Assembly (NCBI RefSeq): GCF_006345805.1
Contig: NW_021836057.1
Span: 1-25,077 of the forward strand
Source: Octopus sinensis
Lineage: Eukaryota
Length of the DNA stretch: 25,077 nucleotides
Reading direction: 5' to 3'
Notes under the pieces: generated by a model
What the model was told of the DNA's origin: nothing
What the model saw: only the letters and a program-made list of their open reading frames with translations
The model's database searches: none
In this document: in pieces, positions 17,405 through 17,811 of the stretch
Layout of the letters: each line of letters begins with the position of its first letter
Numbering within the stretch: position 1 is the first letter of the stretch
Position numbers and translations under genes: made by a program

Positions 17405-17811
17405 GTGATGGTATTTTGTCAAGAAAGGGAAGAATGCTACTGCTATTTAGCCCTAGGTAACAACGTTTCCTATTGGTCATGACACATTTTCTGTGTCCCT
17501 ATGTTTACAAAAGGGGAGATATTGTCGAAATCAGTGAATGTATTTCACTCGAAATATATATGTTTTCAAAGGTGAATGAGCATCGACAGTTAGCAAGCCA
17601 TGCAACTCCAGACTGATGACGAGCAATGACTCAGAAACTAGTCTCTGGATGCTGGCTTTGCTGGGTGGAAATACTTATCTCCTTCTTTGAAAACATAAAG
17701 ACACAGGGGATGTGATGTGGACAACAGGAAACGGTATTTCCTAGGGCTAAATAGCAGTAGCATTCCTCCCTTTCATGGGACTGTCACATTAAGTTGACAA
17801 AATATCATTAC
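17405..17811. mobile_element. Fold-back element with long imperfect terminal inverted repeats and an internal hammerhead motif
   Basis: 17423-17520 is the ungapped reverse complement of 17677-17774 (79/98 by manual count). 17405-17422 pairs with 17794-17811 (16/18). Confidence 0.85.
17607..17649 (+). ncRNA. Minimal type I hammerhead ribozyme motif with palindromic stem III
   Basis: Stem I TCCAGA/TCTGGA (perfect 6 bp); CTGATGA 17613-17619; stem II GAG(C)..(G)aCTC flanked by C17620.A17633; GAAA 17634-17637; ACTAGT palindrome; GUC cleavage triplet 17641-17643. Confidence 0.72.

What the first reader, a model, noticed from the sequence alone, without database searches (positions are those of the whole stretch)
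17405..17811. Fold-back element: ~100-bp inverted arms enclosing a hammerhead ribozyme
Seen: ungapped inverted arms 17423-17520 / 17677-17774 (79/98; outer 38 nt 36/38), further outer arms 17405-17422 / 17794-17811, and a 156-nt spacer holding a complete hammerhead motif. No ORF is present. As RNA this would be a long rod with a self-cleavage site in its loop. Knowledge: MITEs have terminal inverted repeats but not ribozymes; retrozymes and Penelope pseudo-LTRs have ribozymes, usually in direct repeats, although Penelope elements can form inverted ends. Inference: either an inverted pseudo-LTR derivative of a Penelope-like element, a MITE that captured a ribozyme, or an undescribed non-autonomous ribozyme retroelement that yields long dsRNA. 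I cannot tell from this window whether it is already catalogued.
Basis: partly seen in the sequence, partly recalled or inferred. Interest (0 to 1): 0.85.

Follow-up and report, generated by a model that had tools for sequence, protein, structure and literature searches.

The report
Octopus hammerhead-bearing inverted retroelement fragment
This is a real but old and probably inactive piece of a hammerhead-ribozyme-carrying retroelement in an octopus-type genome, inserted into a TA microsatellite as two head-to-head copies; it is an ordinary by-product of how Penelope-like elements insert, not a new kind of element.

Summary
The arms are 79/98 complementary, the outer arms 16/18, and the spacer is 156 nt and contains a type I hammerhead (cleavage site 17643|17644).

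The window is cephalopod DNA. Its interspersed repeats match Octopus vulgaris at 85-94%.

The arms belong to a repeat family. O. vulgaris and O. sinensis carry a 222-bp near-perfect foldback with homologous arms and no hammerhead. It is inserted in a (TA)n tract together with a 53-nt one-sided extra segment. The orthologous site in O. bimaculoides is empty.

The hammerhead is the dimer-dependent metazoan kind. Its helix III is the palindrome ACUAGU, which cannot close as a monomer. Its helix I and III sequences are identical to hammerheads I found in tandem repeats in marine metagenome contigs. Its helix II closing pair is a C·A mismatch.

Best reading (about 0.55): two head-to-head, 5'-truncated cDNA copies of one Penelope-like or retrozyme-type unit. 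The long copy (17522-17812, +) keeps the ribozyme. The short copy (17404-17521, -) does not. Published Penelope enzymology fits: both target strands are cut and extended, targets are AT-rich, and the hammerhead lies near the reverse-transcription start.

No copy linked to a reverse transcriptase could be retrieved, so the MITE and native-hairpin readings remain open. Interest is modest.

The parts
17404..17521 (-). Left arm: a short inverted copy of the 3'-terminal part of the unit. Its 3' terminus faces outward at 17404. It has a 19-nt deletion between 17422 and 17423 relative to the right arm.
   Evidence: 79/98, 17/19; alignment with the O. vulgaris foldback arms shows that the 19 nt are ancestral.
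17522..17588 (+). Upstream part of the long copy (the left part of the spacer). It contains a B-like segment at 17557-17577 that pairs with 17676-17699 and encloses the hammerhead hairpin.
   Evidence: fold of 17522-17812, z = -3.3. (similarity of B to the spacer, 13/1000 shuffles).
17589..17665 (+). Hammerhead hairpin, type I. Helix I core is 17607-17612 / 17644-17649, extended with bulges to 17590/17664. CUGAUGA is at 17613-17619. Helix II is at 17620-17633, with three base pairs (G-C, A-U, G-C), a C·A closing mismatch and loop CAAUGA. GAA is at 17634-17636. Helix III is the palindrome ACUAGU at 17637-17642. C17 is at 17643. The predicted cleavage site is 17643|17644.
   Evidence: (z = -3.0). 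A covariance model built from independent tandem hammerheads finds it as the only hit in 138 kb (22.9 bits, E = 0.011).
17666..17675 (+). Short linker between the hammerhead hairpin and the right arm.
17676..17812 (+). Right arm: the 3'-terminal 137 nt of the long copy. Its terminus at 17812 abuts (TA)n. It contains the ancestral 19 nt at 17775-17793 and the conserved family block CCTAGGGCTAAATAGCAGT.
17813..17829 (.). (TA)n tract directly flanking the right terminus. Presumed target microsatellite or target duplication.
   Evidence: The same arrangement occurs at the O. vulgaris/O. sinensis copy.
17356..17403 (.). 48-nt non-repetitive segment between the upstream hairpin and the left terminus. 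It may be the counterpart of the 53-nt one-sided 'tail' of the O. vulgaris insertion. Sequence similarity is not significant.
   Evidence: not significant. This is inference only.

Best explanation
The 409-bp fold-back is a dead, non-autonomous retro-insertion of the Penelope-like element (PLE) / animal retrozyme kind, in a cephalopod (octopus-type) genome.

Proposed structure. One RNA unit 'U' carries a type I, dimer-dependent hammerhead about 170 nt upstream of its 3' terminus. U was reverse-transcribed from both cut strands of an AT-rich (TA)n target. The two 5'-truncated cDNAs were then joined head to head.
- Long copy: 17522-17812, + strand, 291 nt. It reaches back through the hammerhead.
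- Short copy: 17404-17521, - strand, originally about 137 nt. It stops before the hammerhead.

On this reading the 'arms' are the shared 3'-terminal part of U, the 'spacer' is the extra upstream part of the longer copy, and both outer ends are element 3' termini.

Age and state. The arms were identical at insertion and have since diverged by about 20% through neutral decay. That implies roughly 30 My, using the octopus TE calibration in PMC13282606. The ribozyme is a passenger. In the parent element it would process tandem transcripts as a dimer. Here it is a single copy with a C·A mismatch at the base of helix II, and is most likely inactive.

Shown:
- the inverted repeat;
- the hammerhead anatomy;
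- homology of the arms to an octopus foldback family;
- insertion of that family into (TA)n with a one-sided tail and an empty orthologous site.

Inferred:
- the PLE/retrozyme parentage;
- the twin-priming mechanism;
- the inactivity of the ribozyme.
For: (1) Host. The window's roughly 400-bp interspersed repeats match O. vulgaris chromosome OX597830.1 at 85-94%.

(2) Family. O. vulgaris L025:12236-12457 is a 222-bp foldback with arms 92-100% complementary and a 7-nt loop. Its arms align with both window arms along their length: shared termini ATAGAATGGT..TGTCAA, the block ACTGCTRTTTAGCCCTAGG, and GACACA.

(3) Insertion anatomy. O. bimaculoides has the empty site ...TATATATAATATATATAT|GCTAAAAAGG. 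O. vulgaris and O. sinensis have (TA)n | a 53-nt non-palindromic segment | the foldback | (TA)7 | GCTAAAAAGG. The insertion is therefore not delimited by its inverted repeats. It carries a one-sided tail and duplicates TA repeats.

(4) Arms identical at birth. The O. sinensis left arm still matches the right arm at positions where the O. vulgaris left arm has mutated. The palindrome was therefore essentially perfect at insertion and decays without compensation. In the window, arm mismatches show no significant bias toward RNA pairing: 9 G·U, 5 A·C, 8 transversions.

(5) Hammerhead type. It has a 6-bp helix I followed by an asymmetric internal loop, a short helix II, and a 2-bp palindromic helix III. 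This is the 'canonical metazoan type I' architecture, said to work as a dimer (PMC4209133). L030-L032 are marine-metagenome contigs with tandem repeats of 727 nt and 1021 nt. They carry hammerheads with identical helix I (CCAGA/UCUGG) and helix III/cleavage sequence (GAAACUAGUC). The CC/GG pairs lay outside my search pattern.

(6) Unit integrity. In the 291-nt long copy alone, 17559-17578 pairs with 17676-17697 around the hammerhead hairpin. This ties the spacer to the right arm as one unit.

(7) Literature.
- PLE insertions often carry an adjacent inverted 5'-truncated copy and a one-sided 30-40-bp tail. Several clades favour (TA)n (PMC8557442).
- A purified PLE protein cuts and extends both target strands and prefers AT-rich DNA. 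It starts reverse transcription about 90 nt downstream of the hammerhead cut site (PMC11167929).
- Animal retrozymes are argued to be non-autonomous PLE derivatives (bioRxiv 10.64898/2026.07.22.740005).
- O. vulgaris has active PLE families (PMC13282606).
Against: - No copy of the unit attached to a reverse transcriptase / GIY-YIG ORF, or to a pseudo-LTR, was found. I could only sample about 170 kb of cephalopod DNA.
- Only one copy carries the hammerhead. The other (orthologous in two species) does not. Association of arms and ribozyme therefore rests on n = 1 plus the internal pairing argument.
- The O. vulgaris tail is 53 nt, longer than the published 30-40 bp. It has no significant similarity to the window's flanks.
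- In the window the left terminus does not abut (TA)n. The nearest left (TA)n is 231 nt away, behind another hairpin.
- The O. vulgaris copy is symmetric, with both copies truncated at the same mini-hairpin. That also fits snap-back synthesis or a palindromic MITE.
- TA flanks are compatible with a Tc1/mariner-type TA duplication.
- Rfam does not recognise the hammerhead.
Confidence: 0.55

Rival explanations
1. Palindromic MITE or foldback DNA transposon, for example a Tc1/mariner-type element with a TA target. Its internal region acquired a hammerhead-bearing fragment by capture or nested insertion. On this reading the arms are terminal inverted repeats recognised by a transposase, and the ribozyme is incidental.
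For: - Terminal inverted repeats run to the ends of the element.
- Both known copies abut TA repeats, and a TA can be read on each side.
- The O. vulgaris copy is a near-perfect palindrome with no hammerhead.
- O. vulgaris has many active Tc1-mariner and MITE families.
Against: - The O. vulgaris/O. sinensis insertion includes a 53-nt non-palindromic segment outside the inverted repeat. It adds about 7 TA units rather than one.
- The spacer contains a segment that pairs with the inner right arm around the hammerhead. A foreign insert would not be expected to do that.
- According to the literature read, type I hammerheads of this architecture occur in PLEs and retrozymes.
Confidence: 0.2
2. The whole hairpin is the native unit. 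This would be a retrozyme-like, non-autonomous element whose RNA is a long rod with the hammerhead near its tip. It would be copied as a hairpin, and the short O. vulgaris foldback would be an internal-deletion derivative, for example by deletion between the TGTGTC direct repeats.
For: - The rod is extremely stable (z = -15).
- Animal retrozyme RNAs are described as highly self-paired, 170-400 nt and under 50% GC. This element is 409 nt and 40% GC.
- Both window arms contain the GACACA-loop-TGTGTC mini-hairpin, which forms the apex of the short foldback. A deletion between these repeats would therefore yield the short form.
Against: - There is no tandem or second hammerhead and no direct repeats.
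- The hammerhead is intact in the middle of the element rather than split at the ends, as a cleaved monomer would be.
- The O. vulgaris/O. sinensis copy was a perfect palindrome at insertion. That points to duplication of one template, not to an evolved, imperfect RNA rod.
- Arm mismatches show no significant G·U bias.
- The tandem-repeat hammerhead elements L030-L032 are not rod-like (z = -1.5, no inverted repeats).
Confidence: 0.15
3. The hammerhead-like motif is a chance match, or a relic too degraded to matter, inside an ordinary inverted repeat.
For: - There is no Rfam hammerhead hit, even when only 86 nt are searched.
- The helix II closing pair is C·A.
- A relaxed descriptor gives 0.023 chance hits per window and a strict one gives 5.5e-4. 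A genome-wide scan would therefore meet some chance matches.
Against: - Helix I is extended by about 11 further pairs into a 77-nt hairpin of its own (z = -3.0). Its axis differs from that of the large inverted repeat.
- Helix III is the exact palindrome needed for dimer function.
- The helix I and helix III sequences are identical to genuine tandem-repeat hammerheads, including positions outside the search pattern.
- Rfam also misses those genuine hammerheads.
Confidence: 0.07

Closest known systems
Penelope-like elements (PLEs): terminal (pLTR/ORF-junction) region with hammerhead, in the typical 'inverted 5'-truncated copy' insertion arrangement
   Same: - A type I, dimer-type hammerhead lies near the element terminus.
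- Truncated copies sit head to head, with both 3' termini facing outward.
- The target is AT-rich / (TA)n.
- The related octopus insertion has a one-sided tail.
- The host genome is known to carry active PLEs.
   Different: - No reverse transcriptase / GIY-YIG ORF and no direct pseudo-LTRs are present here.
- No sequence homology to a catalogued PLE could be tested.
- The tail of the relative is 53 nt, against the published 30-40.
- The hammerhead has a 2-bp helix III ('canonical' type), not the helix-III-less 'min-HHR' most common in PLEs.
Animal non-LTR retrozymes (Cervera & de la Pena 2020), including solitary 'monomer' copies
   Same: - Type I hammerhead.
- About 400 nt long, 40% GC, no ORF.
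- Highly self-paired RNA.
- Mollusc hosts are known.
- Proposed to be mobilised by PLEs.
   Different: - Retrozymes are head-to-tail tandem repeats bounded by hammerheads. Here there is a single hammerhead and no direct repeat.
- The self-pairing here comes from an inverted duplication.
Tandem hammerhead repeats in marine metagenome contigs (L030 Ga0314680_10104106, L031 OBQE01000158.1, L032 OQVM01076114.1)
   Same: The helix I core (CCAGA/UCUGG), the catalytic core and the helix III/cleavage sequence (GAAACUAGUC) are identical. The asymmetric internal loop in helix I is also shared.
   Different: - Helix II differs: G-C-closed GACC/GGUC in those contigs, against C·A-closed GAG/CUC here.
- Monomers are 727 nt and 1021 nt, in direct tandem.
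- There is no inverted repeat and no other sequence similarity.
Palindromic MITEs / foldback elements
   Same: Long terminal inverted repeats, small size, no ORF, TA-rich insertion sites, and a near-perfect hairpin relative.
   Different: - The relative's insertion is not bounded by the inverted repeats.
- It carries an internal ribozyme of retroelement type.
- The apparent TA duplication is longer than 2 bp.

Membership tests
Hammerhead ribozyme, type I (metazoan, dimer-dependent) | Conserved core: C3-U4-G5-A6-N7-G8-A9, G12-A13-A14, A15.1-U16.1, and H17 not G | tested here: met
   CUGAUGA at 17613-19, GAA at 17634-36, A17637/U17642, C17643.
Hammerhead ribozyme, type I (metazoan, dimer-dependent) | Type I topology: helix I open, helices II and III capped. 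Helix I about 6 bp followed by an internal loop. Short palindromic helix III. | tested here: met
   Helix I is 6 bp and is extended with bulges to about 17 pairs. Helix III is the palindrome ACUAGU. The monomer catalytic fold is 6 kcal/mol worse than the MFE. The dimer cofold is 7.8 kcal/mol better than two monomers. The architecture matches that described in PMC4209133.
Hammerhead ribozyme, type I (metazoan, dimer-dependent) | Watson-Crick closing pair of helix II (usually G10.1-C11.1) | tested here: not met
   The pair is C17620·A17633. The next three pairs are standard. The related L030-L032 hammerheads have G-C here.
Hammerhead ribozyme, type I (metazoan, dimer-dependent) | Match to a curated covariance model | tested here: inconclusive
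   There is no Rfam hit at gathering score or at E<=10. Rfam also misses the tandem hammerheads L030-L032. A model built from those finds this site alone in 138 kb (22.9 bits, E = 0.011). That test is partly circular, because those loci were found with a pattern taken from this site.
Hammerhead ribozyme, type I (metazoan, dimer-dependent) | Self-cleavage at the predicted site | not testable with these tools
   Needs in vitro transcription of monomer and tandem constructs.
Penelope-like element (autonomous) | ORF with a telomerase-like RT and a GIY-YIG endonuclease | tested here: not met
   No non-repetitive ORF occurs in the 25-kb window. This locus is therefore at most a non-autonomous or truncated derivative.
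Penelope-like element (insertion signature) | 5'-truncated copy with an adjacent inverted 5'-truncated copy, AT-rich/(TA)n target, and an optional one-sided tail | tested here: met
   The window has head-to-head copies with termini facing outward and (TA)n at the right end. In the O. vulgaris/O. sinensis relative, comparison with the empty site shows insertion into (TA)n with a 53-nt one-sided segment. The signature is as described in PMC8557442 and PMC11167929.
Penelope-like element (insertion signature) | Sequence continuity or homology with a PLE pseudo-LTR or ORF start | not testable with these tools
   No Repbase/Dfam library and no searchable octopus genome were available. Peptide-based searches found nothing.
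Animal non-LTR retrozyme | Head-to-tail tandem repeats, each with a type I hammerhead | tested here: not met
   There is a single hammerhead, with no direct repeat of the unit in the window.
Animal non-LTR retrozyme | Monomer of about 170-400 nt, under 50% GC, no ORF, highly self-paired RNA | tested here: met
   409 nt, 40% GC, z = -15. The pairing stems from the inverted duplication.
Animal non-LTR retrozyme | Expression as linear and circular RNA | not testable with these tools
   Needs RNA data.
MITE | Insertion bounded exactly by the terminal inverted repeats, with a fixed-length target duplication | tested here: not met
   In the only copy with an empty orthologous site, the inserted DNA includes 53 nt outside the inverted repeat plus about 7 extra TA units. 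Microsatellite instability weakens the target-duplication part of this test.
MITE | Termini shared with an autonomous DNA transposon | not tested
   No transposon library was available.

The most novel reading that the evidence does not exclude
Cephalopods might harbour an undescribed retrozyme variant whose functional unit is the whole hairpin: a roughly 120-bp double-stranded stem with a dimer-activated hammerhead near the tip. Transcripts would be long dsRNA that is opened by ribozyme cleavage. That dsRNA could feed the very active ADAR editing or small-RNA pathways of octopus. The short hammerhead-less foldbacks would be its deletion derivatives.
Probability: 0.07. Interest if true: 0.7.

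Novelty: new member of a known kind. Interest (0 to 1): 0.3.

Why it matters
If the reading is right, this locus is a clean, small example of what Penelope-like insertion leaves behind in a mollusc genome. Two opposed, truncated cDNAs sit in a TA microsatellite, one of which still carries the ribozyme. This fits the recent in vitro finding that a PLE enzyme cuts and extends both target strands.

It also flags a cephalopod repeat family with an empty-site control across O. bimaculoides, O. vulgaris and O. sinensis. That family could be used to study PLE or retrozyme integration junctions.

Practically, it warns that 'hairpin with a ribozyme in the loop' can arise as an insertion artefact and need not be a designed RNA. 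It does not open a new class of element.

Tried and rejected
- Rfam at gathering score on the window, and at E<=10 on 601 nt and on 86 nt: no hammerhead hit. I set this aside as uninformative, because Rfam also misses the genuine tandem hammerheads L030-L032.
- Exact 22-mer from the arms against metagenome and viral contigs: 0 hits.
- Hammerhead pattern against viral contigs: 23 hits, at or below chance expectation, not followed up.
- Concatenated six-frame peptides of the element against 5.8 billion proteins, in the hope of called ORFs on other copies: nothing at E<=1.
- Profile of the two arm peptides against 1.84 billion representatives: nothing.
- Supplementary files of the PLE and retrozyme papers searched for the motif: none held, or no match.
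- Other copies of the element, arms or spacer in the window, in O. bimaculoides (30 kb) and in Argonauta hians (26 kb): none.
- Similarity of the O. vulgaris 53-nt tail to the window's flanks or spacer: not significant.
- Idea that the right arm is the start of a PLE ORF. There is an ATG at 17626 in loop II and 30 open codons, as in the anole PLE where the ORF starts in stem II. However, the reading frame is not conserved between the window and the O. vulgaris arms (a 2-nt length difference), and no protein hits were found. I kept this only as a lead.
- Exact look-up of ten window ORFs in the protein collection, to extend the locus: none present.
- tRNA scan, to test whether the neighbouring interspersed repeats are tRNA-derived: no tRNA found.

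Full report
**1. The observation**

The inverted repeat is exactly as described.
- 17423-17520 against 17677-17774 is 79/98 complementary without gaps.
- The outer 38 nt are 36/38.
- 17405-17422 against 17794-17811 is 16/18.
- The spacer is 156 nt.
- The repeat finder reports 102-nt arms at 80%.

In 200 shuffles of the neighbourhood, the best 98-nt inverted window never exceeded 49 matches. The 409-nt RNA folds with z = -15 on either strand. A gapped alignment shows that the offset between inner and outer arms is a single 19-nt indel.

**2. The hammerhead**

A motif scan of both strands finds one convincing hammerhead in the window. Its coordinates are:
- helix I: UCCAGA 17607-12 / UCUGGA 17644-49
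- core: CUGAUGA 17613-19
- helix II: CGAG-CAAUGA-CUCA 17620-33
- GAA: 17634-36
- helix III plus C17: ACUAGU-C 17637-43
- predicted cleavage site: 17643|17644

*Local structure.* Helix I continues through bulges for about 11 more pairs, giving a 77-nt hairpin (17589-17665, z = -3.0). The axis of this hairpin is not the axis of the large inverted repeat, so it is a separate structure.

*Chance.* A relaxed descriptor gives 0.023 chance hits per shuffled window and a strict one gives 5.5e-4. In about 100 kb of cephalopod DNA, only this site matched.

*Qualifications.*
- The helix II closing pair is C·A.
- A 2-bp helix III with a 2-nt loop cannot close. The monomer's catalytic fold is about 6 kcal/mol worse than an inactive alternative. 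Two copies pairing through the ACUAGU palindrome gain about 8 kcal/mol.

This is the architecture that Cervera and De la Pena describe for canonical metazoan type I hammerheads, which act as dimers in tandem transcripts (PMC4209133).

*Rfam.* Rfam gives no hammerhead hit. It also fails on the genuine tandem hammerheads described in section 5. The negative therefore says little.

**3. Where the window comes from**

The window is saturated with microsatellites and has no real genes.

An ORF-like translation of its roughly 400-bp interspersed repeat hit an Octopus vulgaris 'hypothetical predicted protein'. The 20-kb O. vulgaris locus around that protein (L025, chromosome OX597830.1) carries several copies of the same repeats at 85-94% identity. 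The window is therefore cephalopod DNA, from Octopus or a close relative.

**4. The arms are a repeat family**

*A relative in O. vulgaris.* Within L025 I found a 222-bp near-perfect foldback (12236-12457). Its arms are 92-100% complementary, the loop is 7 nt, and there is no hammerhead.

Its arms align with both window arms along their length. Shared features are:
- the termini (ATAGAATGGT...TGTCAA);
- the block ACTGCTRTTTAGCCCTAGG;
- CCTG-TGG;
- the GACACA-loop-TGTGTC mini-hairpin, which forms the apex of the short foldback and is present inside each window arm.

The 19 nt that the window's left arm lacks are present in the octopus copy. The left arm therefore suffered a deletion.

*Empty-site comparison.* Orthologous loci obtained through the neighbouring PARP16 gene show the following:
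- O. sinensis carries the same insertion.
- O. bimaculoides has an empty site, ...TATATATAATATATATAT|GCTAAAAAGG.
- The filled site reads: (TA)n | 53-nt non-palindromic segment | foldback | (TA)7 | GCTAAAAAGG.

The inserted DNA is thus not bounded by the inverted repeats. It has a one-sided extra segment and is accompanied by a long TA duplication.

*State at insertion.* Comparing O. sinensis with O. vulgaris shows that the palindrome was essentially perfect at insertion. It has since decayed by uncompensated point changes in one arm.

**5. The hammerhead belongs to a real class found in tandem repeats**

A pattern built from the core plus 3 bp of helix I found three loci in metagenome collections: L030, L031 and L032.
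- Their hammerheads have the same helix I (CCAGA/UCUGG, two pairs beyond my pattern).
- They have the same helix III and cleavage sequence.
- They have a proper G-C-closed helix II.
- They have a similar asymmetric internal loop in helix I.
- They sit in direct tandem repeats of 727 nt (99% identical) and 1021 nt (97%). That is a retrozyme or pseudo-LTR-like context.

They share nothing else with the window element and are not rod-like.

A covariance model built from them finds the window site as the only hit in 138 kb (22.9 bits, E = 0.011). This is partly circular, since those loci were selected with a pattern from this site.

**6. Mechanism**

*What the literature says.*
- PLE insertions typically include an inverted 5'-truncated copy next to a truncated or full copy, a one-sided 30-40-bp tail, and, in several clades, a bias for (TA)n (PMC8557442).
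- A purified PLE protein cuts and extends both strands of an AT-rich target. It starts reverse transcription internally, about 90 nt downstream of the hammerhead cut site. This explains the tail (PMC11167929).
- Animal retrozymes are 170-400-nt AT-rich units with type I hammerheads. They are argued to be non-autonomous PLE derivatives, and solitary monomers are common (PMC7229834 and bioRxiv 10.64898/2026.07.22.740005).
- O. vulgaris has active PLE families (PMC13282606).

*How the window element fits.* It fits as two head-to-head cDNAs of one unit.
- The + strand copy, 17522-17812, reaches back through the hammerhead. The cut site lies 169 nt from the terminus.
- The - strand copy, 17404-17521, stops earlier.
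- Both 3' termini face outward, and the right one abuts (TA)n.

*Is the spacer part of the same unit as the right arm?* Within the long copy alone, 17559-17578 pairs with 17676-17697 around the hammerhead hairpin. The same segment resembles the left arm's inner part (13 of 1000 shuffles score as well). This links the spacer and the right arm as one unit and argues against a foreign insert in the spacer.

*Decay.* Arm mismatches are 9 G·U, 5 A·C and 8 transversions on the + strand. That gives no significant sign of selection for RNA pairing. The Jukes-Cantor distance between the arms is 0.24, and CpG is depleted (6 observed against 16 expected). With the octopus calibration in PMC13282606 this suggests an insertion roughly 30 My old (inference).

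*Activity.* A single, decayed, dimer-type hammerhead is unlikely to cleave here (inference).

**7. Rivals**

*MITE that captured a ribozyme.* This remains possible: the element has terminal inverted repeats, TA flanks and a palindromic relative, and the host has abundant Tc1/mariner MITEs. The empty-site anatomy and the internal pairing argue against it.

*Native hairpin retrozyme variant.* This would be the interesting reading. It is disfavoured by the perfect-palindrome birth of the relative, the lack of tandem copies, and the lack of G·U bias.

*Chance motif.* This is unlikely, given the extended helix I, the palindromic helix III and the identity to tandem-repeat hammerheads.

*The main gap.* I could not search an octopus genome or a repeat library. 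No copy linked to a reverse transcriptase was seen, and the hammerhead-arm association rests on one locus.

**8. Verdict**

The feature is real. This is a new (as far as I could check, uncatalogued) member of a known kind: a hammerhead-bearing PLE/retrozyme-type fragment in the usual inverted insertion arrangement.

Interest is modest at 0.3. The most novel reading not excluded is a hairpin retrozyme feeding dsRNA pathways, to which I give about 7%.

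Noticed in passing
window 17174-17355: A second, older hairpin lies immediately upstream of the element. Its arms (17174-17219 / 17307-17355) are about 75% complementary with an 87-nt spacer, and the region folds with z = -4.3. It directly abuts a (TA)n tract at 17150-17172. No relatives were found in about 170 kb of cephalopod DNA. It may be another foldback insertion in the same microsatellite, or part of one complex insertion.
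   Followed up: partly
window 5967-6398, 6952-7364, 7535-7775, 8218-8442, 11827-12211, 12844-13262, 16453-16661, 23500-23934, 24226-24606: About nine copies, in both orientations, of a SINE-like interspersed repeat of roughly 400 bp. They match O. vulgaris copies at 81-94%. ARAGORN finds no tRNA in them. An O. vulgaris annotated 'hypothetical predicted protein' (CAI9735586.1) is an ORF inside such a repeat.
   Followed up: partly
window 9258-9616 and 12464-12693: Copies of another interspersed repeat family, which also occurs twice in the O. vulgaris locus (L025 4307-4532 and 6320-6553) at 86-93%.
   Followed up: no
window 100-5400, 10000-10500, 13500-16400, 16660-17145, 17936-22200: More than half of the window is microsatellite or minisatellite. 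This includes long (CAT)n, (CCA)n and (AGT)n arrays, (TAGA)85, (ATGT/ATGC)n, and a 77-bp minisatellite at about 2976-3500 with 97-98% identical units. These create spurious ORFs of up to 1116 aa.
   Followed up: no
L031 316-349 and 1043-1076; L030 631-665; L032 767-800: Marine or other metagenome contigs carry canonical type I hammerheads in direct tandem repeats of 727 nt and 1021 nt. These are probably retrozymes or PLE pseudo-LTR tandems of an unidentified marine animal. Rfam does not detect these hammerheads even at E<=1.
   Followed up: partly
L025 12183-12457; L033 29090-29368; L026 about 20351-20371: The hammerhead-less foldback between PARP16 and ARMC6 is present in O. vulgaris and O. 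sinensis and absent from O. bimaculoides. This dates that insertion to after the split from the O. bimaculoides lineage, and shows that the family was active fairly recently.
   Followed up: yes
window 17626-17715: An ATG sits in loop II of the hammerhead and opens a 30-codon frame running into the right arm. This recalls the anole PLE, whose ORF starts in stem II. The frame is not conserved in the O. vulgaris arms, and there are no protein matches.
   Followed up: partly
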